From Octopus sinensis (taxonomy: Eukaryota), in the NCBI RefSeq assembly GCF_006345805.1, contig NW_021832227.1:248001-312000 (forward strand): a DNA stretch of 64,000 bases, in the 5' to 3' direction. A program made the position numbers and the translations under genes. Below are positions 3,130 through 61,979 of this stretch, piece after piece (the first letter of the stretch is position 1; every line of letters begins with the position of its first letter). The notes below the pieces were generated by a model that worked only from the letters and a program-made list of their open reading frames with translations, ran no database searches and had not been told where the DNA came from.

Positions 3130-5280
3130 TTATTGACCAACGGACCAGGGTAAGCCAGTTAATTATAATCCCCCGTTAAGACCGGAAGGAAAGTAAGAGA
3201 TCCCCATTTCTCTACGGGACACCATATGAAGTATAGCCATCCAAGGTAAATATCATTCTATGTTTTAATTTTGACTCGTTTACTACTAAGATATCCGGCC
3301 AATGGAAAATCACGAGCCGGATTAGCTCGGAACGCCGTCTCCATATTGATCTGGCGTTCATGAGGATGACCACAAGAGAGCCTTTCACACGGGTTGGTGG
3401 CAGGCCTCCCGTAGGAGCGCCACCATCTCCCGTAAATATCGCTCTTTTTCGTTAGAGATCACATTTTTCGATCCCAATTTAACAATTTCCGCCTCAATTG
3501 ATTTAAGTGACTTGTCTATCGCAAAGTTAAGTTCCTTTTAAGGGGGACTTTTATTTTAGGTCGTCTGCCCCTCGTTAGTTTTTTCTCCGGAATTAATTTT
3601 GAGACTTCTGGTGCTTCCAGATCTATGGTCTCAGTCTGAGTATGACAAAAAGTGACAAAAAAAATGATTCAAAATTAACCCATTCCTAATTAATATCTGG
3701 TATGCTCTCCTTTTGCCGTAAAAATTTCTCAGCATCGTTTTTTAACTGATAGAATGAGTTTTTCAATAAAATATTTTGGAATATTTTCCCAAATATGGAG
3801 AAGTTCCTGCTTTAGTTCTTTGACATTTTTTACATCGACTTTGCGTAATTCAGCCTTCATATGAGCCCATATATGCTCAATTGGGTTCAGATCATGTTTT
3901 CTTTTTCGAAATAATCCATAATTAACTTAGCAGTATGACAAGGTGCATTGTCCTGCTGAAAAATGAAATCGCAAAGTCCCATTTTTGCAACAGATCTCTG
4001 TAGCTTGTTGGCTAAAAGGTGAAATATTTCGCCGAATTTAATGTCCCGTCAACAAAAACTAATTCTCCAACCCCGTTAAAAGAAAAAACATCTCCATACC
4101 ATGAGTTTCCCTATTTTTTGTTCTGTAAAATTCAGACCAAATCAACCTGTTCCAAATTTTACAGTTGTTGAAATATTTTTAGACTTAAATTGTTCACCGC
4201 TTTTCCTATAAACTATTTTTCTTGTTTTGTTTGGAATCACGTGAAAAACGCATTCATCCGAAAAAATTGTACTTTTCCATTCGTTAATAAGATATGGTTA
4301 AAAATTTTTTCGTTATTTTCAATCCTTTTTCAGTGTTTTTTTGCATAGGTTCACCCGTTTGGGTTCCAATAGATACATTGCTTTTAAGGACTTCTGTTGA
4401 GAGACGATTCTTCCAAAAGGAGTTACATTTTGCTGTTTCTTCCAAGCGGAAGTCACACTTTGGGCTTTCTTAGAAACCGTGTACTATCCGGAATCAGAGG
4501 GCGGATTCGATTCCGTATTTTTGTTATTCTTCGCTGAGAGACAGCCTCCGTATTTATCCCAGTGTTCTGAGGATTCACAATTGATGCAAAGTTTTGTGCT
4601 TTTTTCGGATTTGGGCATTCTTTCCCATCATGAGGACCGCCACAAGTTAAGCATCTTACTTCTGCGTTGCAAAAACGTGCTATATGCCCGTAGGATTGGT
4701 ATTTGTAATAACAAGTCGGAACCATTTGCAGTCAACTTTTCTGAAGCCAATGTTTAGTCCCATTCGGATTAATGAGTTTGTCTCACCTCTCAAAGGGATA
4801 GTCATCTTTACTATTGGTAAGTTTTTTCCAGCCTTCATGAAACGTTCCACTTTAAATCGCGGTTAGAGTATCGTCGAGAGATCCTTCTTCAGTTCTTCAT
4901 TACTTGCCCAGTATGGGATATTCTTTAAGAAGATCTCCGATGGACGTAACTTGTCGTATTTGATGGCAATCCGAGCCAAAAGATTTCAGCTGATCAATCT
5001 CCATTTAAAAGTTATTAGCCTCCGCATGAGATCTAACTCGAGTATAAATGAGCCATTCATTTTGCGTAAAATTCTTGCCTTTAGAGCAGTTGGAATTGAG
5101 CATAGTATGTTGTATTTCTGAATTTCACCAAGTATTTGACTGCTTACAGTCACATGAAGTGATAAAGTTCCACGTGGAGTATCAGTATTATTATTTTCAA
5201 TTTCAATATTAGGCTTACTTTGCATCACAGCAACCATTCTTAAAGGCAAGGGGGGATCATATTATGCCACGAGCCTAATA
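3130..5280 (-). mobile_element. Degraded APE-type LINE 5' part: gag-like ORF1 with CCHC knuckles plus the start of the ORF2 endonuclease
   Basis: ORF1 shows CYYKYQSYGHIARFC..CLTCGGPHDGKEC knuckles. The ORF2 start MNARSIW..PDILVVNESKL..LDGY followed by a GDYN remnant matches an APE endonuclease. Interrupted by a Tc1 fragment. Confidence 0.7.
3690..4380 (-). mobile_element. Tc1-like DD34E transposase fragment nested in the LINE ORF1
   Basis: Minus-strand LMVW, FIFQQDNAPCHTAK and DLNPIEHIWAHMK motifs, with frameshifts. No TIRs recognised. Confidence 0.75.
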
Positions 5281-5593: not shown

Positions 5594-7804
5594 TCAGAAT
5601 CCTCCAAGTTCTGCGTATGCTAAATCAATATTGGCGCTTATTTCTTTGTATATTCTTTTCTCGGACATGAGTTCTTCTATAAATATATTAGAGTGAAATA
5701 AAGATAATGTTGTTAAATGATCCAGGGAATGGTTAGACACCAATAATAATGGATATTAGTTAAATGGAATTTATGTCATTCATCGTCGATTGTATCAATT
5801 CTTCTAATTCCGCAGTTTTTTTAATCGCATTTTCCAGCTTACCTGAGCAAATATTGAGAAAAACAGACCTTCCGTAATTTCTAGATCTGATTCCAGTCTT
5901 TTGTTGCAATATAAATATTCTTCATTGGATTTGGTCGCCTATGTGAGTGTGTTAGCGGGGAATGTCAGTTAATAGGTAGCACAGCAACCTTCTAGTCTAT
6001 CGATGTCTTGCTGACGCTTATTGGACACCCTATCGAACTCTGCTGCCCTTGTCTCGCTCTTAAATTCCATTAAACTCGACAAATTATGCCGCATAGCAAA
6101 GCTGCACATTACCTCATACAAATCTTCTCTCAGTTTCTTGATTGTAGCCTCGTATTCTTCTTCCTTGTTATATGCCTACAATAAATATGTCAGTTTAATT
6201 AATTAAAGTTAGCAACACGGGCCTAGTGGAGATAAGAAAGGAAGGATTGTTAGCTCGGTACCTCAAGAGAGCTAATCTCAAGTGATTTGAGATTGTTTCC
6301 AACAACTTTTAGCTCATCTTCTAACTGGACAACCTTACTACAAAAAATATAAATAAAACTGCTCTTAATACACCGGGAACCGCAGCGACAGATTAAGACT
6401 AACCTCATTTGAGTGAGCTTCCAATGTTTTTATTCTGTATTGGACGTTCGAATGTTCGTTTGTAGCTATCGTCAGTTGTCTAAATCAGTTCCAATGAACT
6501 GACTTTTTATATTCATTTGCCTGTTCTTCAAATTTATCACAAGATAATTCCAAGTTTTTGTTTGTTCTTAAAACCTAATCGCCAGTATTAGCCGTATGCG
6601 CCACCACTGCTACACTTTGCCCACGCAGCGGTTCCCGGACTAAAATACCTCTCAGCCAATTCAAGACGAGCCATTGTCCTCTCCAAGTCTATTTCAGTGA
6701 CCATCAACTTCCTGCTGGTCTATTTATCAATTACGTGTTATTTTTACCTCGTCGTATTTATGGTCGCTGTCGTCTGCTGTCCATTTTATATCGGCCAATT
6801 GTTTTTCCAGTAGGTAAATTCGCTCTTCGTCGTTGTTGGACTTGGTTTCGAGGACTTTGCGGATTCTAAAACGCATTTATTGCGGGCAAAGTGTTAGCAG
6901 TGGTGGTTGAAAGGAAAATTTAGCTAACACTGTCTAATTCGTCCTTCATTGCTCCCTGTTCATTTTTAATTCTGTTCAATTCTTTTTCAAGTCATCATTA
7001 GCATCTTCCAAGGCCTCATTTTTATGTTCCAGCACTTTCCGTTGGCTTTAATTGTTAGTGGTAGTTAATAGGTCAGGTAAATACCGGTCACTTTCGTCGA
7101 ATTTTTCAATGTAATGATTAAGTTGCTGCGTCTTTTCTTTCAAGTTGGAATCTGTGGCTTCGTTATTATCGTCCTGCAGCTTCAAATGTCGGTTTAGAGA
7201 TTGTAGCTCGTTTTCTTTCTATAATTAATTATTTATGGCATATTATTGGAATAATTAAACACATAATTATTATATACACTCTCTAGTTCAGTTTGCAAGG
7301 ATTGATAATCCTTTTGGATTTTTATAAATTTATCCTCAAATTCATCTCTTTCATTTCTTAAAGTCTCGATTTTTGTTTTTAGGTTAGCTATTGGATTGTT
7401 TTGCATTCCACAAAAATTGCAATTTGTTAATATAATTTATTATATTTACAATCTATGTTATCCTCTCAGAAAATAATACTTAAAATTAAATTACTTAATA
7501 AATAATAATTAATTCAAAAAATGACCTCGCTTAATTCTTTTAATGCATCATTAAGCTGAGCTGAAACTTGATTATACTTCTCGTCAAGATTTTCGTTGTC
7601 AATATTGACAGCTTTCTCTCTTTTAAGAATATCTGAGATTTCATCTTCTTTCTAAAAAAACACACAAAGACTTACTTCTTTCAACGTATTTTTTAAATTT
7701 GTGACTTGTGATTCAAGTTCATCAGCTTTTTCTATGCAGTTCTCTTTTTCCATTTTAAGTTCCAAAATTTTTTTCTTCAATGCTCCAAGTGTTGCTTCTG
7801 CCAT
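5594..7804 (-). CDS. TPM: Tropomyosin with alternative first exons and five pairs of alternative exons
   Basis: Exons in transcript order: 1a 7804-7676, 2 7651-7526, 1b 7406-7278, 3 7218-7085, 4x 7045-6929, 4y 6865-6748, 5y 6719-6649, 5x 6574-6504, 6x 6479-6404, 6y 6337-6262, 7 6175-6113, 8y 6058-5989, 8x 5938-5869, 9x 5842-5760, 9y 5676-5594. All junctions are GT-AG. Exon lengths 126/134/118/71/76/63/70/83 nt equal the canonical tropomyosin sizes as recalled. Peptides GALKKKI, RKVLE, SRKLMVTEIDLER, EDELKVVGNNLKSLEIS, ETRA. Confidence 0.95.
6373..6387 (-). promoter_or_regulatory. Intronic RNA pairing site B2 (between exons 6x and 6y)
   Basis: Sense CGCUGCGGUUCCCGG pairs with B1 at 14 of 15 positions. 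Confidence 0.7.
6601..6638 (-). promoter_or_regulatory. Central intronic docking region holding adjacent sites B1 (6624-6638) and A2 (6601-6622), between exons 5y and 5x
   Basis: Sense CCGGGAACCGCUGCG-U-GGGCAAAGUGUAGCAGUGGUGG. B1 complements 6373-6387 and A2 complements 6884-6906. It is a GC-rich island in an otherwise AT-rich intron set. Confidence 0.75.
6884..6906 (-). promoter_or_regulatory. Intronic RNA pairing site A1 (between exons 4x and 4y)
   Basis: Sense CCACCACUGCUAACACUUUGCCC is the reverse complement of site A2 (6601-6622): 22 bp with one bulged A. The complementarity is direct; the function is inferred. Confidence 0.75.
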
Positions 7805-11129: not shown

Positions 11130-13305
11130 CCTCGAGGTTTTAATGGACCTCATCATGAATGTTGAGGACATTCACGTTGTTCATTTTAATCAAATGCAGA
11201 AAATAATTTTTTGATTTTTTGGCAAGAAGGTTTTAAGGACCTCATCATGTAAGTCGAGGACATCGTAGTTGTTCATTTTAACCAAAATGCAGAAAATTTT
11301 TTTTTAATTTTTTTTGGGGGGGAAGGTTTTAAGGACCTCATCATGTAAGTCAAGGACATCGTAGTTGTTCATTTAAACCAAAATGCAGAAAATTTTTTTT
11401 AATTTTTTTTGGGGGGAAGGTTTTAAGGACCTCATCATGTAAGTCGAGGACATCGTAGTTGTTCATTTTAACCAAAATGCAGAAAAGTTTTTTTTAATTT
11501 TTTTTGGGGGGAAGGTTTTAAGGACCTCATCATGTAAGTCGAGGACATCGTAGTTGTTCATTTAAACCAAAATGCAGAAATTTTTTTTTAAATTTTTTTT
11601 GGGGGGAAGGTTTTAAGGACCTCATCATGTAAGTCGAGGACATCGTAGTTGTTCATTTTAACCAAAATGCAGAAAATTTTTTTTTAATTTTTTTTGGGGG
11701 GAAGGTTTTAAGGACCTCATCATGTAAGTCGAGGACATCGTAGTGTTCATTTAAACCAAAATGCGGAAAATTTTTTTTAATTTTTTTTGGGGGGAAGGTT
11801 TTAAGGACCTCATCATGTAAGTCGAGGACATCGTAGTTGTTCATTTTAACCAAAACGCAGAAAATTTTTTTTTAATTTTTTTTGGGGGGAAGGTTTTAAG
11901 GACCTCATCATGTAAGTCGAGGACGGTACTTTTGTCGAAGTGGTCGCAGTTTTTTTAGAAGATAATTAAAATTAATTAATTTTTTTAGTGAAAAATAGAT
12001 TATTTAATTTATAACCCTCTATCAATAATTTAAATGGTTATTAAAATTATTTAAAAATTTATTTAACCAATTTAGTCATTTTTAGTACGCGGCATCCAAA
12101 TTCCAGGACTGTAGAAGGAATTTATGTCTTTTACAATCTGTGCAAAACATTCCTTATAGTTCTGTATTTGTTTTCGCCACATAAATTCTGAAAAAATAAC
12201 TAACTAAAAAAACCTGCGAAATAAGATCCCAGATGATGTCTTACAGCTCCTCTTTGAGCTTTATTCTTGCATTTTGCACTTCCCCACATTCGTTCTACTG
12301 TCTGGGTGTGCACTCCCGTCGTTGGATCCACAAAGAATTTTCTGAATATATTATATTTCCTTACTTATGGTTAACGGTTTCGTGTGTGTAGCCGTTTTCA
12401 ACCAATTGATCAGTTGAATACCCTAAATGTTAATCAAATAATGGTAACCTTTCCAGCAGTCACTATAAATAATGCTTCCCACCTCGACATATCGAATTAC
12501 TAGACTGAGCAGTGTTTCTCTGCTCCTATCCGCGACTGGTTGCAGAAAACACTGTTTGGTGGCTCGACAAATACCACCGAAGACCCACTGTTTTATGCCT
12601 ATCGTAACTCCATAAGTATATGTAGGCGATGACATCCTCAAATGGCAATCTACAATTCTCTAACCAGGTATCTAGAATTATTTGAGAGAAATTATACCTT
12701 TTTTAATAGAACATTGGACTCTACAACCAACTCTTGAGCATTTCCAATTGAGCTTCGGTCCCAAGACTAATTCCATCTGATGTCCCTTCGGACATATACG
12801 TGATTTTGAAAGGATATCCACATTTTGCAGAAAATGCACTGCATCCTCCTTACTTATTGGGAGCTGTCGGAATTTGATGTTGCATAAGTCCACAACAGAA
12901 TTTTCCATGTGACCTATAGTGCCAGTTTATATCAATATTAGGTACATGCTCGCCATAATATTAAAAAAAATTAGAAAATAAATTAGTAAAAAATTTAATA
13001 ATATTTTAAATTATTGATAGAGCGACTTAAATAAAATATAATATATTCCACCTCAAAAATTATTAGATTTTTTAAAAGGCCTAAAAAAACTGCGACCACT
13101 TCGACAAAAGTACCTCGAGGACATCGTAGTTGTTCATTTTAACCAAAATGCAGAAAATTTTTTTTGTAATTTTTTTTGGGGGGGAAGGTTTTAAGGACCT
13201 CATCATGTAAGTCGAGGATATCGTAGTTGTTCATTTTAACCAAAATGCAGAAAATTTTTTTTTTAATTTTTTTTGGGGGGAAGGTTTTAAGGACCTCATC
13301 ATCGA
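11130..13305. repeat. ~95-bp tandem array inside Helitron copy 1 (about 10 units plus a degenerate one), split by Merlin
   Basis: Unit aaggttttaaggacctcatcatgtaagtcgaggacatcgtagttgttcattttaaccaaaatgcagaaaa(T)naa(T)n(G)n. Units start at about 11227, 11323, 11417, 11512, 11607, 11702, 11795, 11890, 13185 and 13281. Confidence 0.95.
11925..13114 (-). mobile_element. Merlin (IS1016-like) DNA transposon, internally deleted, with an intron-containing transposase
   Basis: TIRs GGTACTTTTGTCGAAGTGGTCGCAGTTTTTTTAG at both ends; 8-bp TSD TCGAGGAC (11917-11924 and 13115-13122). Transposase 12908-12072 has WVFGGICR, IIYSDCWKGY, HETVNH, FVDPTTGVHTQTVERMW and SYFAEFMWR. Confidence 0.92.
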
Positions 13306-27944: not shown

Positions 27945-28847
27945 TTGGAACGGGTCAGGACTCAAAATCCCCGAAGACACAACGAAACAAAGGAACTGGG
28001 ATAACATTGTCTGCTCCAAAATTTCAGAAGGGCTTAAAAAAAAGCAGAAGCAAATCAACATCGCCTTGCTTGCCTGGTGTCAGCCTCAAGTGGAGGGAGC
28101 GGAGCATGGCTTGGTGCAATCCCTTGCCCAAATCTCGGGACTTTTTTGGACGACGATTCTTTGAGGATTGGAATCGGACAAAGACTTGGACTAGACGTTT
28201 GCCAGGAGCACCGATGCCGCTGCGGGAAAACGGTCGATGCGAAGGGATTGCACCCGCTATCCTGCAGGAGATCCGCCGGAAGAGGACCACGTCACGCCGC
28301 TCTGAACGACGTGATCGTCAGAGCTCTGAAGGCTGCAGGCTTCCCAGCACAGCTTGCTTGAACCAGTGGGTCTCGATCGAGGTGATGGAAAGAGACCTGA
28401 CGGGATGACTCTTTTCCCTTTCAACTCCGGACGATCTTTGGTCTGGGACGCAACTTGCGTCGATACTTACTCAAGCACGAATCTCCTTAAATCGGTTCAG
28501 ACACCTGGAGCAGCTGCCTCAATCGCGGAAAACCTTAAAACCAAAAAATATTCCTTCCTCGGGGACCGCTACAGATTCACCCCTGTTGCGGCTGAGTCAT
28601 CAGGAGCTGTGGGCCCAGCGACTGCCGAGTTCTTGCGCAAACTCGGAAGAATGCTCGCCACAAAGAAAAATGATCCTCGTGAAGGAGTATGGCTAAGACA
28701 AAGGATCGGAATAGCCATACTCCGAGGGAACTCGCTTTCCATACAGGCAGCGGGCTTCCTCAATTGATTTCTCAAATCAATCTCTTCTCTGAATTTATTA
28801 ACTGACATTATTAATAATTTAGTAAAAAAAAAAAAAAAAAAAAAAAA
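27945..28847 (+). mobile_element. CRE-like non-LTR element, 5'-truncated, with poly(A) tail
   Basis: [84 protein letters not shown]; short 3' UTR and an A-run at about 28824-28847. One in-frame stop. Confidence 0.9.
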
Positions 28848-48743: not shown

Positions 48744-50871
48744 CTAGCTCGGCAGCTCGCTTCGCTCACCGCGACCTAGCTCCTGCGGAGGGCCTGTTTC
48801 ATCAAACAACTATAAGTTTATGTAGATGTATAAAACTACCTGGTTTAATGTAACCCTAGTCGTCCGTCCTTCCTTGGCATATATGAATAAATTTTCTCTT
48901 CTGCCTACCCTCGAGCATCCCACATACAGCTGTCCATGTGAAAAGCACTCACTCTCTAAAAATAACCCAACTACCTTTAATGACTGTCCCTGGGCCTTGT
49001 TTATTGTCATTGCAAACTTTTTTTTTCATTTTTTGTGGTTTATTTTTTTTTATATTTAATTTTTTCATTTTTCCTTTGTAATTTCCTTTTTTTTCTTTTT
49101 TTTATTTTTTTGTTTTTACTGGCGGAAATGGGGCAGGTGGAGATGCGGCAGGCGGAAATGCGGCAGGCAAGAAAGCGACACACAAAAAAGCGACACACAA
49201 AAAAGATTTAATTAATTACCTTATTAAGCTGACCGTTTTTTCTTCAGCTTCGTTTTTCCTCCTTCGGTTATCTATTTAAAAAATTATTTTTGAATAATAA
49301 AAAAGTTTAGGAAAAGAGGCATACCGAAAATAAATTCTATCTTTACGAAAAACTCAAGTAAATAGTTAATATTTTTACGCAAATTCTTCTGATTGCGCTG
49401 TCAATTGGTGGTAAATTGTGTTAATGGTTGTGCTAATGTGGTTTCAACTATCAAAGTGTTTTTCAAAATCTGTTAATTGCACACTCTATTCAAGGTCGTG
49501 CGTCAATTGGTGGTAAATTGTGTTAATGATTGTGCTAATGTGGTTTCAACTATCAAAGTGGTTTTTCAAAATCTGTTAATTGCACACTCTATTCAAAGTC
49601 GTGCAATCTGTGATTGCACATTCTGTCAAAGTCAAATATGATAATAGCTTTAATTTTGATTCATGGTCGATAATGATATATGCATTTAATTTTAAAGAGA
49701 AAAACATAGGATGAATTGAATTTCTTTATCGCGAATAATTGGGAGTTCATCATTGTTAATATTCTCGCTGTCGTTTTCATCAAGGATATTCTTAATACGT
49801 GAGATTTTTGCCTTGAAGGTTTTAATGGACCTCATCATGAATGTCGAGGACATTCGCGTTGTTCATTTTAATCAAAATGCAGAAAATAATTTTTTGATTT
49901 TTTGGGGGGAAGGTTTTAAGGACTTCATCATGTAAGTCGAGGACATTGTAGTTGTTCATTTTAACCAAAATGCAGAAAATTTTTTTTTAATTTTTTTTTG
50001 GGAGGGAAGGTTTTAAGGACTTCATCATGTAAGTCGAGGACATTGTAGTTGTTCATTTTAACCAAAATGCAGAAAATTTTTTTTTAATTTTTTTTGGGGG
50101 GAAGGTTTTAAGGACTTCATCATGTAAGTCGAGGACATTGTAGTTGTTCATTTTAACCAAAATGCAGAAAATTTTTTTTTAATTTTTTTGGGGGGAAGGT
50201 TTTAAGGACTTCATCATGTAAGTCGAGGACATTGTAGTTGTTCATTTTAACCAAAATGCAGAAAATTTTTTTTTAATTTTTTTTGGGGGGAAGGTTTTAA
50301 GGACTTCATCATGTAAGTCGAGGACATTGTAGTTGTTCATTTTAACAAAATGCAGAAAATTTTTTTTTAATTTTTTTTGGGGGGAAGGTTTTAAGGACTT
50401 CATCATGTAAGTCGAGGACATTGTAGTTGTTCATTTTAACAAAATGCAGAAAATTTTTTTTTAATTTTTTTTGGGGGGAAGGTTTTAAGGACTTCATCAT
50501 GTAAGTCGAGGACATTGTAGTTGTTCATTTTAACCAAAATGCAGAAAATTTTTTTTTAATTTTTTTTGGGGGGAAGGTTTTAAGGACTTCATCATGTAAG
50601 TCGAGGACATTGTAGTTGTTCATTTTAACCAAAATGCAGAAAATTTTTTTTTAATTTTTTTTGGGGGGAAGGTTTTAAGGACTTCATCATGTAAGTCGAG
50701 GACATTGTAGTTGTTCATTTTAACCAAAATGCAGAAAATTTTTTTTTAATTTGTTTGGGGGGAAGGTTTTAAGGACCTCATCATGTAAGTCGAGGACATC
50801 GTATTGCCAATTTGAAGTTGGTGTGCACACACAGACAGACAGACACACACCATACCATTTTATTATTAAGA
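48744..50871 (-). mobile_element. Non-autonomous Helitron, copy 2
   Basis: Same 3' hairpin and CTAG (48744-48747) and same 5' TC-microsatellite end as copy 1. Shorter helicase remnant ([19 protein letters not shown]); ~100-bp internal duplication at about 49400-49610. Confidence 0.9.
49810..50800. repeat. ~95-bp tandem array inside Helitron copy 2 (about 10 units plus a degenerate one)
   Basis: Units start at about 49910, 50007, 50102, 50196, 50291, 50385, 50479, 50574, 50669 and 50763. Confidence 0.95.
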
Positions 50872-51954: not shown

Positions 51955-52273
51955 AAACTCGGCAGCTTCATTCACAGCGACCTAGCTCTTGCGAAGGGCC
52001 TGTTTCATTAAACAGCTATAAGTTTATGTAAATATATAAAACGACCTGGATTGATATAACCCTATTTTAACAATAAACCATGTTTGTCATCCGTCTCTCC
52101 TTGGCATATCTGAATAAATTTTCTCTTCTACCTACACTTGAGCATCCCACATAAAACAGTCCACGTGAGAAGGACTCGCTCTCTGAATACAAGCCAATTA
52201 CCTTTACTGACTGTCCCTCGGTCTTGTTTATTATCATCGCAATACTCATTTTCAAGGGAAATTGCACCGCGGA
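51955..52273 (-). mobile_element. Older Helitron 3' fragment of the same family
   Basis: Diverged QFPLKMSIAMIINKTEGQSV..LFYVGCSSV and a degraded terminus; abuts a CRE-like element. Confidence 0.8.
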
Positions 52274-53360
52274 ACCAGAGGCCCTCTCGGATCCTTAAGT
52301 CTTCTCCCGATGGACTGCCCGACCTCGTTGAGGAACGAGTTAGTCTCCTTTCCCGCGGCTCCAGGGAGATTGGCATAATACGGTAACGGTCCGCGAGGGA
52401 AGAATACTTTTGTAGTTTCATCCTTTCGGCGTGGTTTGCAGCCGAACAAGAGTTCGCAGCGGAAGAATCGATCCTCGACTTTGAGAAGGTATCAACAACG
52501 GTAACATCCCATACGAGGGCTTTCCCGGACGATTACGGAAATATTGTCATCCCATCAAGCCTTTTCCCGTCTCCCCAATCGAGTCCGACCGATTCGAGAA
52601 GGCACGAATGGCCCGCGGATTCAAGACCGGCCTTCACGATTTGATTGAGGGTCTTGTGTCTGTATTCCATGCCTGCGCTCCTCTTGCAGGAGAGTAGGTG
52701 CAGTCTCTTTTCGTCAACGGCCTTACCGCATCTGCAGCGGTGTTTTGCGCAAACGTCCAGGCCGAGTCGGTGTGCGACTCCAATGCGCATGACAGTATCG
52801 TCTAGCCACGTCCCGATACTGAAGAGAGGAAGAGCATTCAGCCAGCTGCCAGAGTGAGGGGCGGATGCCGCACGAAGGCATGCCAGGCGGTGTTGGTCAA
52901 GGGTTACCGATAGCTCAGACACACGCGCTCGGCATGCGATAGTGTCCAAGGCACGTTGGGAGGAGAAATCTCCAGGCCTCTCAGAAAAGAAGCGATCCCA
53001 GGTAGCAAGCCCATCCGACAAAGCACCGTCCAGGCAAGATTCGAAAGGTTTGAGTAGGATCTCTGAGGCCAGGTTGTTGCACATCGAAAGGGAGGATAGA
53101 TATGCCAGGAGTGCCAAAGCATCGAGGTGGACGTAGGGGACGGATTCAGCAGCTTTTTTCAGAATGGCGTCGTATGCAAGGAGTAGATCCATTTGCAAGA
53201 AACAGGGATTGCTTCTGAGAATGAAGATAAGTTTCGGCAGATGGATGTTGTTTCTCAGGAGGAAAAAGGCAGTGTGTAAGTCCAGGATAGATAGGTTGGT
53301 TGAAACTCTTTGAAAGTATTCGGTTTTGGCAGCTGAGGCGGGTCGCAGAGGATTGGACAA
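52274..53360 (-). mobile_element. CRE-like fragment lacking both ends
   Basis: LPKLIFILRSNP, HSGSWLNALP, MRIGVAHRLGL..CRCG..HLLSC, GDGKRLDGMTIFP; in-frame stop. Confidence 0.85.
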
Positions 53361-53399
53361 AAAACTGTTAAAATATTCTCCAAAATCTGATCAATTAAT

Positions 53400-53600
53400 T
53401 TGTATTAATCCTTTCGTGCGTGTCCATTTCGCCGGGCGAGAGGCTGGCGCGATCTATAAAGGGTTAGAGCGTACTATCGCAGGGGATATCCGATCAAAAA
53501 ACCATCTCGAAGGAAACACAGTGATCCTGTCCGGTCTCTTCCCATCCCCCAATCGATCCAAGTGGGTTCAAATATGGAGAAGATTCCGGCGACATCAAAA
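53400..53600 (-). mobile_element. Small internally deleted CRE-like remnant
   Basis: GDGKRPDRITVFP joined almost directly to RISPAIVRSN. Confidence 0.5.
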
Positions 53601-53759
53601 TTGCTTATAACTGTTAAAGATCAATCATTTATGAGAAAAACGTTTTGGAATTAACTTAATCGGTTAGCAAGCACGATGAAACAGTTGTAGGATTTTTGTA
53701 ACTAATGAAATCTCAATCACTGGTCAATAATGTTAAATTGCATTAATTGAAATAAGGAT

Positions 53760-54045
53760 TGTGACAGGTAAGAGGCGGAACCACGCCGGAGGCGGAACCT
53801 GGAGGAGGAATTTTTAATAAACAATAATTTTTTGATTTAATTTTCATTGGAAAATCATTTAGGGTTAGGGTTAGAGTTAGGGTTAGTTTTTCACTTGGGG
53901 AAAAAGTGAAATAAATTTGAACAAAAAATGTATATTTGAGTGTTTTAATAAATATTTTAGTGTACAATTTTAATTTTAAAAACAATTTGAAAAATTCCGC
54001 CTCCAGGTTCCGCCTCCGGCGTGGTTCCGTCTCTTACCTGTGACA
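53760..54045. mobile_element. MITE (~286 bp) with ~56-bp GC-rich TIRs and internal telomere-type repeats
   Basis: TGTGACAGGTAAGAGGCGGAACCACGCCGGAGGCGGAACCTGGAGG.. at the left and its reverse complement at the right (3 mismatches). Flanking direct repeat AGGAT (5 bp if the ends are TGT..ACA; AAGGATT, 7 bp, if the ends are one base shorter). Confidence 0.85.
53859..53886 (+). repeat. Interstitial (TTAGGG)n-type repeat, about 4.7 units
   Basis: ttaggg ttaggg ttagag ttaggg ttag. Confidence 0.85.
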
Positions 54046-54269
54046 AGGATTATACTATACTGGACCGATGGGTGCACAGACGGACTTATTGTCACCAGTT
54101 GAGCGTGATAGCAGGCTGAGAACGATCGCGCAAAATCGATTGCCGTAACACCGATAGTTAACAGCAAGCGACTGAGAAGGTTAATTACGAGTCGTTAAGT
54201 ATCCAAACCCAATAAACCTTAATTTCTGTCTTTTGGACAGAAAAGCAATCGAGTCGATTCGTCTAAGCT

Positions 54270-54630
54270 ACTTTTAAATAATTAAATCCGGGAAGCAGCT
54301 TGTTTGGGACGTCACATGTGCCGACTCTTTCGCCAAGGGAGCCTTGAATTCCACTGCTTGTCGACCCGGTTCGTCGGCCGAGAAGACCAAATCTACGAAA
54401 CTGACGAAATAAGAGGATTTGCGCAATCGATTTTGCTTTTGGCCAATTGCCGTTGAGACTTCCTGTGTTTTGGGGTCAAGACGCTTGCTCATTCAAAAAA
54501 ACTTGGCCGTCTGTGCACCCATCGCTCCAGAGATCCCAGGGAATTTATATTCCTTATTCAGAGGATATCGTTGGCTGTTTTACGCGGGAATTGTCTCTCA
54601 ATCCTGCGAGCCGGTACTTAATAGCTAGAT
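54270..54630 (+). mobile_element. CRE-like 3' fragment
   Basis: FKSGKQLVWDVTCADSF..RFCFWPIAVETS; frameshifted. Confidence 0.75.
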
Positions 54631-59501: not shown

Positions 59502-61979
59502 ATGTTTAATACATTTTTGCTATCATTAGAATTATCTTTCTCGAATGGTAAAAATTTACGATGACGTATTTTATAGACCGAATTTGTTTGAATGATCGGT
59601 GTTATATACACTATTACAATAAACTACAATATGGAGATGCAGAAGAAGTTTGTAGACAATATGGTGGAAACCTAGCAGTAATTGACAATGCAGTTACAAA
59701 CAAACTTCTTGTCGGTTGAATTACATTTGTAAAAATGTTATAGATAATTTTTATCGGCCTTATAATAATTATATTTATATTGGTGTGGATAATAGAATAG
59801 AAAGCTATGGTTACCGTAATTCTCTCGGAAAAGAACAAGTTATTTATCATAAACATTAAACAAATTAGAAATTTTTTAGCTGGCACAGAGGACAACCAGA
59901 TAACAACAAAGGGCATGAACGCTGCGTTCACATGTACCATACAAATGGAGAATGGAATGACATACACTGCGGCACAAAAATGTCTTTTATTTGTGACTTT
60001 CCAAGTCTTTTCCATATATATATCTTTGTGAATAGAGAAAGACAAATGCTTTCATAAAAAATGCTATACATTGGTTACTGAGAAACAACTTGATTATTCA
60101 AAATCCAGAAAATATTGTGTTGATATTGGGGGTAAATTAGCCACAATAGATTCTGAAGAAATAAACGATTTTATAATAGGTAAATTTTTGAAAGATTTAA
60201 GGATAGATACAGTGCCTGACAAAAAAATTGGATTTGTAATAAATCGACTTTTTTTAAAAATAAATTATAATTTAATTTTCTTACATCATTCTTGGCAAAA
60301 TTAAATTATTTTTTTAATTTTTAAAATTATTTTGGCTTTTAGAATTTAATTTTAAAGCAGAATTTAAAATTTGCCGGACAAATAAAATTGGATTTTTTTT
60401 ATTTTAATGAAACAAATTAAAATTTAATAAGTTAAAATCCCTCCACGTGCTTCATAAGCTTCAAACTTCTTTTTTTCATTGACATAACTAAATTTTCTAG
60501 GTATTTTTTCGGTATTGACTCCCATATCACAACTAATTTTGTCTCCAAATCATGCAAGTTTTTCGGCGGTTTTTGCAATAATTTTCTCTTCATCATTGCC
60601 CAAACATGCTCAATTGGATTAAGGTCAGGTGATTGAGACGGCCAATAAGAATTTTATATTTCTATCGCATATAAATTCTTTAACTACTTGAGAACTGTGG
60701 CATGAAGCATTATCTTGTTGAAAAATACATGAGTTTAACCCCATTTTTAGAGCTGATTGCTCCAGATTATTAAACAAAATGTTTAAATAATAAGCACTGT
60801 TCATTTTTCCATTTATAATAACAAGATTACCGACGCCTTCATATGAGAAACATCCCCAAACCATTAACTTTCCTCCACCATACTCAACAGTAGGTACGAT
60901 ATTGGACTTTTCATAGGCAGTACCGTTTTTTTTGCTGTTATAGATCCTTATTTTGCTGTTATAGACCTCAAAACATGACTCATCGGAGAAGATGACTTTC
61001 TTCCATTCTTCGTCAGATATGGCTAAAAACTTTTTCGCAATTAACCATCTGGATTCGATGTTTTTTGATGTTAAAAGAGGTTTGTGTTTTGCAACTCAGG
61101 CATGTAATCCAAATGAATTTAGTATACGACCAATTGTTCCGGGAGATACGTCCACATTAAATTGAGTTTTTGTTATCTCAGAAAGAGGCACAGCAGAAAT
61201 TGAGGGTTCATCACTCGAGATTAATTGTATTGTGTTTTTTTGATCTGAAGAGAGTTTCGGTAAACGTCCAGATTAATTTTTCGCGTAGTGGTGCCTTCTT
61301 TGGAAAATTTTCTTGTCACAAATCCCACGGTCGATCTGGGAATTTTCAGTATTTTAGATATCTCTTCAATTGTTTTTCCTGAAGAGTAATATCCAATTAT
61401 TACTCCTTTTGTAAAATCAGATAAATGGATTTTTTATTTACGCTTCATTTATACGAAAAACCAATTTTTTTTGTCCAAATCCAATTTTTTTTGTCCGGCA
61501 AATTTTAAATCCTGCTTTAAAATTAAATTCTTAAAAGCCAAAAATAATTTTAAAAATTAAAAAATAATTCTAATTTTGCCAAAAATGGTGTAAGAAAATT
61601 AAATTATAATTTATTTTTAAAAAAAGTCGATTTATTACAAATCCAATTTTTTTTGTCAGGCACTGTACATACTATAATTCATTGATAAATTTAATATCAT
61701 GGAAGATTTTATTATAATTCTCACAATAATAAACAAGTAATTTTATTAATTTTGTTTAATAGAAATATTTCAACTTTGAATCTGCCAATTTCAATAATCA
61801 TCAGAATTGCGGGATTGTTTCTGAGAACGCGGGTAAATGGAAAATGATATCGTGTAAAGAAAGACTCCCTTTTCTTTGCGAAATGCCTGGTTTATAAATT
61901 TAAAAATTTTCTATTTAATTATCTAAAAAAATATTAATTACATATTTTAGCACCTGCTTTGGAATGCGATGCCTATTAA
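59502..61979 (+). CDS. C-type lectin with two CTLDs, interrupted by Tc1 (may be disabled)
   Basis: CTLD1: CY..AEEVCRQYGGNLAVI..YIGV..WHRGQPDNNKGHERCVHM..GEWNDIHC..FIC (QPD and WND motifs). CTLD2: CY..SRKYCVDIGGKLATI | Tc1 | NCGIV..GKWKMISC..PFLCE. Confidence 0.8.
60210..61665 (-). mobile_element. Full-length Tc1-like transposon with long (~200 bp) TIRs, defective transposase
   Basis: CAGTGCCTGACAAAAAAATTGGA.. and its reverse complement, flanked by a TA duplication. VIFSDES, LMVWGCFS, FQQDNASCH, WPSQSPDLNPIEHVW; several frameshifts and a small internal duplication. Confidence 0.95.

What the first reader, a model, noticed from the sequence alone, without database searches (positions are those of the whole stretch)
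6373..6906. Two crossing long-range RNA helices that could coordinate multi-exon isoform choice in tropomyosin
Seen: A1 (6884-6906, just after exon 4x) pairs with A2 (6601-6622) over 22 bp with one bulge, extendable by 2 bp. B1 (6624-6638) pairs with B2 (6373-6387) at 14 of 15 positions. B1 and A2 sit side by side in the 5y-5x intron, and the transcript order A1-B1-A2-B2 means the helices cross. Helix A loops out exons 4y+5y, leaving about 48 unpaired nt between the 4x donor and the 5x acceptor. Helix B loops out 5x+6x, leaving about 45 nt between the 5y donor and the 6y acceptor. Splicing along either path deletes a partner of the other helix. Established: competing docking/selector pairings control mutually exclusive exons in insect Dscam1, Mhc and 14-3-3. 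Inference: here one central intron switches two-exon cassettes in a coordinated way, and looping restores near-normal intron lengths in a genome whose spliceosome is tuned to tiny introns. I do not recall this being described for tropomyosin.
Basis: partly seen in the sequence, partly recalled or inferred. Interest (0 to 1): 0.9.

Follow-up and report, generated by a model that had tools for sequence, protein, structure and literature searches.

The report
Crossing RNA helices in tropomyosin introns
A tropomyosin gene from what is probably a dicyemid parasite, an animal with 24-28 nt introns, carries two strong long-range intron-intron RNA helices placed so that they could switch splicing between two complete three-exon versions of the protein; this is a new variant of a splicing control known mainly from insects, and it has not been tested with transcripts.

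Summary
On the minus strand, A1 (6906-6882) pairs with A2 (6624-6601) over 24 bp with one bulged A. B1 (6638-6624) pairs with B2 (6387-6373) at 14 of 15 positions. Helix A is far beyond chance; helix B is moderately beyond it. The gene is a tropomyosin with three adjacent duplicated exon pairs in the order 4x 4y | 5y 5x | 6x 6y. Each pair has equal length and phase. Tiny introns join 4y-5y (28 nt) and 5x-6x (24 nt). Helix A loops out 4y+5y and helix B loops out 5x+6x. This cuts the 354 nt and 311 nt splices to 48 and 45 unpaired nt.

New points:
- A1 contains the likely branch point of exon 4y, and the bulged A is the branch adenosine. A2 therefore resembles the branch-binding box of U2 snRNA.
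- The genome holds four copies, about 96% identical. Three have lost the y path but keep x open. The window copy keeps y.
- No compensatory changes, transcripts or other species were available.
- The layout matches the bidirectional pairing described for Drosophila srp, extended to two-exon blocks.

Verdict: real, probably functional, a new variant of a known kind. Coordination is inferred.

The parts
7085..7218 (-). Tropomyosin exon 3 (constitutive; ends in phase 2)
   Evidence: tblastn to human TPM1 and exon model
6929..7045 (-). Exon 4x (117 nt here, 118 nt in the three paralogues), donor AGU|GUUAGC
   Evidence: Same phase as 4y. Starts QRKVLE, compared with IRKVLE in 4y.
6983..6987 (-). 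A5 run in 4x, which is A6 in the three other copies. It is either a 1-nt frameshift of the x path in this copy or an assembly error.
   Evidence: Alignment; coordinates
6922..6932 (-). a1: the 4x donor region CAGUGUUAGCU, which pairs with a2 (11 bp including 2 G-U, -16.4 kcal/mol)
   Evidence: MFE fold; invariant in 4 copies
6882..6906 (-). A1: upstream arm of helix A in intron 4x/4y. It contains UGCUAACAC, the likely branch point for the 4y acceptor. The bulged A6894 lies 28 nt upstream of the 3' splice site.
   Evidence: invariant in 4 copies
6748..6865 (-). Exon 4y (118 nt), canonical tropomyosin sequence
6720..6747 (-). 28-nt intron joining 4y to 5y
6649..6719 (-). Exon 5y (71 nt)
6639..6645 (-). 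b1: UUUUAGU just after the 5y donor. It pairs weakly with b2, extending helix B.
   Evidence: three one-sided changes keep the pairing
6624..6638 (-). B1: upstream arm of helix B, 10 nt downstream of the 5y donor
   Evidence: (I21)
6601..6624 (-). A2: downstream arm of helix A, directly abutting B1. Its core CAAAGUGUAGCA matches the U2 snRNA branch-binding box CAAAGUGUAGUA (read in the host U2 copy) at 11 of 12 positions.
6583..6593 (-). a2: GGCUAAUACUG, containing the likely branch point (CUAAU) for the 5x acceptor. It pairs with a1.
6504..6574 (-). Exon 5x (71 nt; acceptor gcgauuag|GUUUUAAG)
   Evidence: Only this acceptor gives the 5y length and phase and an open x path in the paralogues.
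6480..6503 (-). 24-nt intron joining 5x to 6x. It is self-complementary (hairpin) and invariant in 4 copies.
6404..6479 (-). Exon 6x (76 nt)
6373..6387 (-). B2: downstream arm of helix B in intron 6x/6y, 35 nt upstream of the 6y acceptor
6363..6369 (-). b2: AUUAAGA, partner of b1, overlapping the likely 6y branch region
6262..6337 (-). Exon 6y (76 nt), canonical tropomyosin sequence. It carries an in-frame TAG in all three paralogues.
6113..6175 (-). Exon 7 (constitutive)

Best explanation
The four boxes are pre-mRNA elements of a bidirectional long-range pairing switch in a tropomyosin gene. The host organism has ultra-short introns and is probably a dicyemid.

The gene has three adjacent pairs of duplicated alternative exons in the order 4x 4y | 5y 5x | 6x 6y. 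The 28-nt and 24-nt introns tie 4y to 5y and 5x to 6x. The real choice is therefore between 4x+[5x6x] and [4y5y]+6y.

Helix A (A1:A2) does two things:
- It sequesters the branch point of the 4y acceptor. The branch adenosine is the bulged base, and A2 acts as a built-in look-alike of the U2 branch-binding box.
- It loops out 4y+5y, so the 354-nt splice from 4x to 5x behaves like a 48-nt intron.

Helix B (B1:B2) loops out 5x+6x, so the 311-nt splice from 5y to 6y behaves like a 45-nt intron.

B1 and A2 sit side by side in the one central intron. Whichever splice occurs first removes the partner of the other helix and commits the transcript.

Shown: the helices, their strength, their exact placement relative to exons and splice signals, and the exon homology and phases.
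Inferred: that the RNA forms these helices in vivo, that they drive splice choice, and that x and y exons are used as coordinated sets.
For: - Both helices are verified and stable: -47.3 and -29.6 kcal/mol. Helix A is never matched by shuffles or by real-sequence controls.
- In ensemble folding, helix A has probability 0.96. Helix B reaches 0.997 when A2 is unavailable. They contribute about 22 and 15 kcal/mol respectively.
- The arms lie only in the three introns that bound the blocks [4y5y] and [5x6x].
- Elsewhere in the gene, constitutive introns are 24-54 nt. Published dicyemid introns have a median of 27 bp and a mean of 38 bp (PMC6543705, PMC6736024). The 311-354 nt splices are therefore about 10 times the norm, and the helices reduce them to 45-48 nt.
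- A1 contains UGCUAACAC, which matches the branch motifs seen 6-16 nt upstream of other acceptors in this gene. The MFE duplex bulges exactly the second A of CUAAC.
- The A2 core equals the U2 branch-binding box at 11 of 12 positions.
- G-U pairs occur only on the transcribed strand.
- x and y exons have equal lengths and phases and align ungapped in register at 24% identity.
- Across four genomic copies, 2 of 78 helix positions vary (both in L011, which also has a stop in exon 7), against 12 of 125 other positions in the same introns. Fisher p = 0.085.
- Three copies have disabled y exons (shared TAG in 6y, TAA in 4y of L009) while 4x, 5x and 6x all stay open. The window copy keeps y intact.
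- The same four-element topology was experimentally validated for Drosophila srp (PMC4691838).
- No Rfam family explains the boxes.
Against: - There are no transcripts, so exon use, mutual exclusivity and x/y phasing are unobserved.
- There is no covariation: 0 pairs change on both sides among four copies that are 98% identical. Conservation of the helices is not significantly above background (p = 0.085).
- The arms are so similar (22/23 and 14/15) that a recent origin without long-term selection cannot be excluded.
- The two other long splices the model needs, 3->4y at 219 nt and 6x->7 at 228 nt, have no significant bridging helix.
- Mixed exon combinations would be in frame, so nothing but kinetics enforces coordination.
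- In this copy 4x is 1 nt short (A5 against A6), so the x path is frameshifted unless that is an assembly error.
- Most differences in x exons between paralogues change the amino acid (from the translations), so the paralogues may be under weak constraint.
- The a1:a2 pairing would mask the 4x donor and the 5x branch point, which could inhibit rather than help.
Confidence: 0.6

Rival explanations
1. The helices are real RNA structures that influence splicing, but they do not coordinate two isoform paths. For example, each could be an independent exon-skipping or fidelity element. Alternatively, only one path (y in this copy, x in the C8702 copies) is ever productive, and the other exon set is decaying duplicate sequence that the helices help to skip.
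For: - As assembled, every one of the four copies has only one open path.
- No helices exist for the other two long splices the two-path model requires.
- The x segment is very diverged from tropomyosin (28 bits against 108 bits to PF00261).
Against: - Helix A loops out the functional y exons of the window copy. That makes no sense if only y is ever used there.
- Both helices are retained intact in copies with either path open.
- x exons keep splice sites, lengths, phases and open frames in three copies.
- The window's only x defect is a homopolymer indel, a typical long-read assembly error.
Confidence: 0.15
2. The inverted repeats are young, selectively neutral micro-duplications or chance complementarities. 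They are conserved among the four copies only because those copies diverged recently.
For: - Copies are about 96-98% identical throughout, introns included.
- There are no compensatory changes.
- Helix B alone is matched by 0.7% of real-sequence pairs.
Against: - Helix A (24 bp) is never reached by controls.
- Two independent repeats would have to land with their inner arms adjacent in one intron and their outer arms exactly bracketing the two exon blocks.
- The boxes are GC-rich islands in AT-rich introns.
- A1 coincides with a branch-point motif, with the branch A bulged.
- The boxes occur nowhere else in the 2.7-Gb assembly, so they are not transposon-derived.
Confidence: 0.12
3. The flanking inverted repeats promote back-splicing, giving circular RNAs of 4y+5y or 5x+6x, as inverted repeats do in other animals. 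Linear isoform choice would be a by-product.
For: - Helix B brings the 6x donor (16 nt from B2) near the 5x acceptor (49 nt from B1), with the 5x branch point free (and the sequence).
- Exon skipping and circularisation are known to be linked (general knowledge).
Against: - Helix A buries the only good branch-point motif upstream of 4y. Back-splicing onto 4y should therefore be blocked, not promoted.
- There are no data on circRNAs in dicyemids.
Confidence: 0.06
4. The repeats act at the DNA level, for example as recombination or inversion sites flipping the enclosed exon blocks, or as cruciform-forming sequences.
For: They are inverted repeats flanking discrete segments. Dicyemids are reported to have unusual DNA rearrangements and circular DNAs (PMC6543705).
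Against: - All four genomic copies have the same orientation of every block.
- The arms are only 15-24 bp.
- G-U pairs and the U2-like and branch-point logic are strand-specific RNA features.
Confidence: 0.02

Closest known systems
Bidirectional RNA pairing in Drosophila serpent (srp) exon 4.1/4.2 (Yue et al. 2016, PMC4691838), with similar architectures in Dscam1 exon clusters 4 and 9
   Same: There are four intronic elements: one upstream, two in the middle intron and one downstream. They form two long-range helices, each looping out one alternative unit. The authors already note that both pairs could form a long-range pseudoknot. Splice outcome depends on relative pairing strength.
   Different: - Each looped-out unit here is a two-exon block ([4y5y] or [5x6x]) held together by a 24-28 nt intron. 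The blocks are staggered across three duplicated exon pairs, so the switch would coordinate three exon choices.
- One arm covers a branch point, with the branch A bulged.
- Distances are 240-260 nt in a genome with about 27-nt introns.
- The organism is a spiralian parasite, not an insect.
- Nothing has been tested experimentally.
Docking-site/selector-sequence competition in Dscam1 exon 6, 14-3-3zeta, Mhc and MRP1 (Graveley 2005; Yang et al. 2011; summarised in PMC6071210)
   Same: Intronic complementary boxes next to tandemly duplicated, same-length exons. Pairing loops out unwanted variants and brings the chosen splice sites together.
   Different: There is no single docking site shared by several selectors. 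A2 and B1 are separate, adjacent elements that overlap by at most 1 nt. A weak A1-like box upstream of 4x (7064-7057, -10.4 kcal/mol) is the only hint of selector multiplicity.
Human ATE1 exons 7a/7b with competing elements R1-R5 (PMC7797038)
   Same: Competing long-range intronic structures control a pair of mutually exclusive exons. Kinetics of transcription matter.
   Different: ATE1 has a single exon pair, kilobase-scale distances and a shared competitor element (R3).
Structural shortening of long yeast introns by 5' splice site to branch point bridging helices (for example RP51B; Goguel and Rosbash 1993; Rogic et al. 2008; cited from memory)
   Same: In a genome whose spliceosome prefers short distances, intramolecular helices reduce the effective intron length.
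   Different: In yeast this is within constitutive introns. Here it would be used to select among alternative exons.
Vertebrate tropomyosin exon choice: chicken beta-TM exon 6A/6B local stem, and alpha-TM exons 2/3 branch-point steric block (Libri et al. 1991; Smith and Nadal-Ginard 1989; cited from memory)
   Same: The same gene family, with mutually exclusive duplicated exons. RNA structure or branch-point position contributes to exclusivity.
   Different: Those are local structures or steric effects at a single exon pair. They are not crossing long-range helices that link several pairs.

Membership tests
Tropomyosin gene | Encodes a PF00261 coiled-coil protein of about 284 aa | tested here: met
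   The y-path product is 289 aa. PF00261 scores E = 2.8e-53 over profile positions 7-240 of 242. Identity to spiralian tropomyosins is 44-47%.
Mutually exclusive exon cluster from tandem duplication | Adjacent homologous exons of equal length and phase with their own splice sites | tested here: met
   4x/4y are 118/118 nt (117 in the window), 5y/5x are 71/71 and 6x/6y are 76/76. All have AG...GT boundaries. The 87-aa in-register alignment is ungapped at 24% identity.
Mutually exclusive exon cluster from tandem duplication | Exactly one exon of each pair is present in mature mRNAs | not testable with these tools
   No dicyemid transcripts or proteins are in the searchable collections.
Competing or bidirectional long-range RNA pairing control of mutually exclusive splicing (srp/Dscam type) | Complementary intronic elements flank the alternative units, with two elements in the middle intron | tested here: met
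   A1 is in intron 4x/4y, B1 and A2 are in intron 5y/5x, and B2 is in intron 6x/6y.
Competing or bidirectional long-range RNA pairing control of mutually exclusive splicing (srp/Dscam type) | Complementarity exceeds chance and is thermodynamically stable | tested here: met
   Helix A is reached by 0 of 1500 shuffles and 0 of 3000 real pairs, at -47.3 kcal/mol. Helix B is reached by 1 of 1500 and 22 of 3000, at -29.6 kcal/mol.
Competing or bidirectional long-range RNA pairing control of mutually exclusive splicing (srp/Dscam type) | Elements are conserved across species, with compensatory substitutions | tested here: inconclusive
   Only four paralogous copies, 98% identical, were available. 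98.6% of cells are paired and 0 pairs change on both sides. Helix sites vary at 2/78 against 12/125 elsewhere, p = 0.085. No other species was reachable.
Competing or bidirectional long-range RNA pairing control of mutually exclusive splicing (srp/Dscam type) | The two pairings are mutually exclusive, through a shared or overlapping element | tested here: inconclusive
   B1 and A2 abut and share only G6624. They cross, so nested folding treats them as exclusive, but a long-range pseudoknot is sterically possible.
Competing or bidirectional long-range RNA pairing control of mutually exclusive splicing (srp/Dscam type) | Disruption and compensatory restoration of the helices shift exon choice | not testable with these tools
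   This is an experimental test.
Branch-point occlusion element | One helix arm contains the functional branch point of the regulated acceptor | tested here: inconclusive
   UGCUAACAC lies in A1, 28 nt upstream of the 4y acceptor, and is the only YURAY-type motif in that intron. The bulged base is the branch A. Other branch motifs in the gene lie 6-16 nt from their acceptors, and lariats were not mapped.

The most novel reading that the evidence does not exclude
One central intron carries two adjacent docking elements. Through a long-range pseudoknot, they make three neighbouring duplicated exon pairs behave as two all-or-none cassettes (x-x-x or y-y-y). One element (A2) is a cis-encoded mimic of the U2 snRNA branch-binding box. 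It competes with U2 snRNP for an unusually extended branch site, giving a kinetic switch. More generally, animals with about 27-nt introns could need such helices to make any long, exon-skipping splice at all. That would make RNA looping the enabling device for alternative splicing in ultra-compact intron genomes.
Probability: 0.3. Interest if true: 0.8.

Novelty: new variant of a known kind. Interest (0 to 1): 0.65.

Why it matters
Control of mutually exclusive splicing by RNA structure is documented mainly in insects and a few mammalian genes, almost always for one exon cluster at a time.

If this reading is correct, it matters for three reasons:
- It would be the first case in a spiralian or dicyemid.
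- It would give a simple structural answer to how distant exon choices are kept in phase: two-exon blocks plus two crossing helices.
- It would show how a spliceosome adapted to 24-30 nt introns can still perform 300-nt exon-skipping splices.

The U2-like arm that buries a branch point is a compact, testable mechanism for a binary splice switch. The four gene copies with complementary loss of x or y exons offer a natural experiment on subfunctionalisation of isoforms after duplication.

Tried and rejected
- Relatives for covariation. A full-length protein search found nothing above 47% identity. A search with the 4y open frame found no candidate at all. A DNA search of the whole assembly gave only four copies, about 96% identical. 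A cross-species test was therefore impossible.
- Known RNA families. Rfam gave nothing at gathering score in the window. In the gene there was only a sub-threshold ceN89 hit at E = 0.08. An intronic snoRNA or other known RNA is rejected.
- The parasite's own U2 snRNA. The U2 search returned only the 48 best-scoring copies, none on the parasite-like contigs C8698, C8699, C8702 or C1537. The U2 comparison therefore uses one of those copies, taken to be the host's, plus the general conservation of the GUAGUA box.
- Helices for the other long splices (3->4y, 6x->7, 8->9c, 8->9d). None exceeded shuffles. The exon 2->3 intron ends pair weakly, at p about 0.09.
- Other GC-rich inverted repeats in the window, as possible further examples. 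All lie in retroelement-like or terminal-inverted-repeat sequence, not around exons.
- Technical failures. The first duplex scan timed out. RNAduplex on whole introns gave inflated energies for the shuffles too. I replaced it with local alignment scoring and cofold of defined arms.
Only gcgauuag|GUUUUAAG gives a 71-nt exon in the 5y phase and an open x path.
Full report
**1. What the sequence is**

The region lies in a tropomyosin gene on the minus strand, at about 7804-5594. I built an exon model from splice sites and reading frame.
- The exons are 1a, 2, an alternative first exon 1b, 3, 4x, 4y, 5y, 5x, 6x, 6y, 7, 8 and the alternative 3' exons 9a, 9c and 9d.
- The path 1a-2-3-4y-5y-6y-7-8-9d gives an intact 289-aa protein. 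It scores E = 2.8e-53 against Pfam Tropomyosin. It is 44-47% identical to tropomyosins of annelids, flatworms, nemerteans and molluscs.
- Introns between constitutive exons are 24-54 nt, including three of 24, 28 and 24 nt.

The window is contig C8698 of a 2.72-Gb assembly with 13,516 contigs. That assembly also has its own tropomyosin hit on a 64-Mb contig. Among animals, introns this short are reported only in dicyemids and myxozoans (PMC13644364). Dicyema japonicum lives in Octopus sinensis, has 36.7% GC and has a mean intron of 38 bp (PMC6736024). A Dicyema sp. has a median intron of 27 bp (PMC6543705). I therefore infer that the window is a dicyemid contig carried in a cephalopod assembly. 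That is an inference, not a tool result.

**2. The observation**

- A1:A2 has 22 Watson-Crick pairs with one bulged A. It extends by a G-U and a C-G pair to 24 bp, at -47.3 kcal/mol.
- B1:B2 pairs at 14 of 15 positions around a U:U mismatch, at -29.6 kcal/mol.
- Helix A has a complementarity score of 40. No shuffle (0 of 1500, maximum 28) and no pair of real 70-nt segments from the rest of the window (0 of 3000) reached it.
- Helix B scores 25. It was reached by 1 of 1500 shuffles and 22 of 3000 real pairs.
- Folding 7100-6160 gives helix A a pair probability of 0.96. With A2 blocked, helix B reaches 0.997. Blocking both arms of the central intron costs 37 kcal/mol of ensemble energy.
- Because the helices cross, nested folding cannot show them together.
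- The boxes occur only in the four tropomyosin copies of the assembly. They match no Rfam family.

**3. Anatomy**

Each x exon has the length and phase of its y partner.
- 4x/4y are 118/118 nt (4x is 117 nt in the window), 5x/5y are 71/71 and 6x/6y are 76/76.
- The x and y peptides align ungapped in register at 24% identity. These are three adjacent pairs of tandemly duplicated alternative exons, ordered 4x 4y | 5y 5x | 6x 6y.
- The y set is canonical, up to 68% identical to octopus tropomyosin. The x set is strongly diverged.

4y-5y and 5x-6x are separated only by 28-nt and 24-nt introns, the genome's preferred size. The natural splicing units are therefore 4x, [4y5y], [5x6x] and 6y.
- Helix A brackets [4y5y] and helix B brackets [5x6x].
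- With helix A formed, the 354-nt splice from 4x to 5x has 22+26 = 48 unpaired nt.
- With helix B formed, the 311-nt splice from 5y to 6y has 10+35 = 45 unpaired nt.

**4. New details**

(a) A1 contains UGCUAACAC.
- The same CUAAC/CUGAC/CUGAU/CUAAU motif sits 6-16 nt upstream of most acceptors in this gene (read). It is the only such motif in intron 4x/4y, 28 nt from the 4y acceptor.
- In the predicted duplex the unpaired base is the second A of CUAAC, which is the branch adenosine.
- As a consequence, the A2 core CAAAGUGUAGCA matches the U2 snRNA branch-binding region CAAAGUGUAGUA at 11 of 12 positions. I read that U2 sequence from one of the copies returned by the family search, taken to be the host's.
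- Helix A should therefore compete with U2 snRNP for the 4y branch site, as well as looping the block out.

(b) Both helices have outward extensions in which the donor pairs with the branch region of its long-range acceptor.
- a1:a2 joins the 4x donor to the 5x branch region. It has 11 bp, scores -16.4 kcal/mol and is invariant.
- b1:b2 joins the 5y donor to the 6y branch region. It has 7 weak pairs.
- GUUAG donors are inherently complementary to CUAAC branch sites, so I give these extensions little weight.

(c) Reading frame does not enforce coordination, because every one-per-pair combination is in frame. Only the architecture would enforce it. Mixed isoforms need 166-209 nt unbridged splices that compete with the 24-28 nt introns.

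**5. Related sequences**

The assembly has three more copies of the whole cluster on contig C8702 (L009, L010 and L011). They are about 96% identical to the window.
- All three keep 4x (118 nt), 5x and 6x open.
- All three share an in-frame TAG at the start of 6y. L009 also has TAA at the end of 4y. L010 and L011 have single-base deletions in y exons. L011 also has TAG in exon 7.
- The window copy is the reverse. Its y path is intact, and 4x lacks one A of an A6 run (6987-6983).
- Variable sites number 17/265 in x exons and 30/265 in y exons.

This reciprocal pattern is what coordinated x-x-x and y-y-y usage followed by subfunctionalisation would leave. It is only suggestive, for three reasons:
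- The numbers are small.
- The homopolymer indels may be long-read assembly errors.
- Most differences in x exons between copies change the amino acid, as the translations show.

For the helices themselves:
- 98.6% of pair cells are standard pairs, against 31-52% when partners are slid by 1-3 columns.
- No pair has changed on both sides. The two disruptive changes are both in L011.
- Helix positions vary less than the other positions of the same introns (2/78 against 12/125), but not significantly (p = 0.085).
- No other species could be reached.

**6. Mechanism proposed**

This is a bidirectional pairing switch.
- If U2 engages the A1 branch site before A2 is transcribed about 260 nt later, 4y is used. 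4y-5y is joined through the tiny intron, and helix B then brings the 5y donor to 6y.
- If A2 captures A1 first, 4y is masked and [4y5y] is looped out. 4x joins 5x, and 5x-6x follows through the tiny intron.
- Each long splice removes an arm of the other helix.

Shown: the structures, energies and positions. Inferred: in vivo folding, the effect on splicing and the phasing of exon choices.

Unexplained: how 4x is skipped in the y path, and how 6y is skipped in the x path. No helix bridges 3->4y or 6x->7.

**7. Comparison with what is known**

The topology is one element upstream, two in the middle intron and one downstream, forming two helices that could form a pseudoknot. This is the topology shown experimentally for Drosophila srp exon 4.1/4.2 and proposed for Dscam1 clusters 4 and 9 (PMC4691838). 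Its origin by tandem duplication has been modelled (PMC6071210).

It differs from that model in four ways:
- The looped units are two-exon blocks staggered over three exon pairs.
- One arm occludes a branch point.
- It occurs in an ultra-short-intron spiralian.
- The gene is tropomyosin.

My literature searches found no description of long-range pairing at tropomyosin exons or in dicyemids. I therefore rate it a new variant of a known kind. The structures are confirmed, the splicing function is probable, and the coordination claim is plausible but untested.

**8. Rivals**

I considered four rival explanations:
- splicing helices that act without coordinating the two paths;
- neutral young repeats;
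- circRNA promotion, which is disfavoured for helix A because it buries the 4y branch site;
- DNA-level inversion, for which there is no orientation variant among the four copies.

Their evidence and weights are given in the Rival explanations section.

Noticed in passing
whole window (G000:C8698:248001-312000); also contigs C8702, C8699 and C1537: The window has 24-28 nt GT-AG introns, about 35% GC and a spiralian-like tropomyosin. It nevertheless sits in a 2.72-Gb, 13,516-contig assembly that has its own tropomyosin on a 64-Mb contig. It looks like a dicyemid parasite contig carried in a cephalopod host assembly.
   Followed up: partly
L009:1620-2710(-), L010:2200-3300(+), L011:1980-3075(+) against window 6100-7230: There are four copies of the exon 4-7 cluster with reciprocal decay. 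The three C8702 copies have stops or frameshifts in y exons but open x exons. The window copy has intact y and a 1-nt-short 4x. The C8702 copies also lack normal exons 1-2. L010 has a fused mini first exon (ATGCAAAACAATGAAAAATTC...), and L009 starts within exon 3.
   Followed up: partly
L009:2709-3486(-) and L013:1417-2428(-): A second, more diverged tropomyosin paralogue type has one hybrid exon made of the first 76 nt of 4x joined to the last 53 nt of 6y. It has no x/y cluster. In L009 its exon 9a lies about 13 nt upstream of the partial exon 3 of the next copy.
   Followed up: no
window 6480-6503 (-): The 24-nt intron between 5x and 6x is an almost perfect hairpin (GUCAGUUC AUUG GAACUGAU) that pairs its own 5' splice site with its branch/3' region. 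It is invariant in all four copies.
   Followed up: no
window 6061-6076 with 5758-5773 (-): A 16-nt, 94% complementary pair (-15.2 kcal/mol, reached by 0 of 500 shuffles) links the 3' end of intron 7/8, just before the exon 8 acceptor, with the stop-codon end of alternative exon 9c. It may be relevant to 3' exon choice.
   Followed up: partly
window 7057-7064 (-): An A1-like box (CUACCACU, next to the 4x branch motif CUAAC) in intron 3/4x can pair with the 3' part of A2 (-10.4 kcal/mol). It is probably a vestige of the 4x/4y duplication, or a weak second selector.
   Followed up: partly
window 7278-7406, 5843-5938, 5760-5803 and 5594-5676 (-): The gene also has an alternative first exon (1b, own ATG, 129 nt) and three alternative 3' exons (9a, 9c and 9d). 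9c and 9d each give a tropomyosin-like C-terminus.
   Followed up: partly
window 52000-54600: A GC-rich retroelement-like block has long open frames. A 30-bp perfect inverted repeat (53776-53805 / 54000-54029) encloses an AT-rich stretch containing TTAGGG-like repeats (about 53862-53888). Nested 18-bp and 14-bp inverted repeats lie at 54066/54507 and 54130/54423. Similar reverse-transcriptase-like sequence is present near 28000-28400.
   Followed up: partly
window 60208-60395 with 61476-61667; 11925-11958 with 13081-13114: Long terminal-inverted-repeat-like pairs (65 bp and 34 bp perfect cores) are spaced 1.1-1.3 kb apart. These are probably DNA transposons or MITE-like elements.
   Followed up: no
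window about 49980-50750 and about 11200-11700: Arrays with a period of about 95 bp are inferred from regularly spaced repeat hits. These are AT-rich tandem repeats.
   Followed up: no
window about 4600-4700 (-): Directly downstream of the tropomyosin gene is an open frame with a CCHC zinc-knuckle-like motif (CLTCGGPHDGKEC). This suggests a retroelement gag remnant.
   Followed up: no
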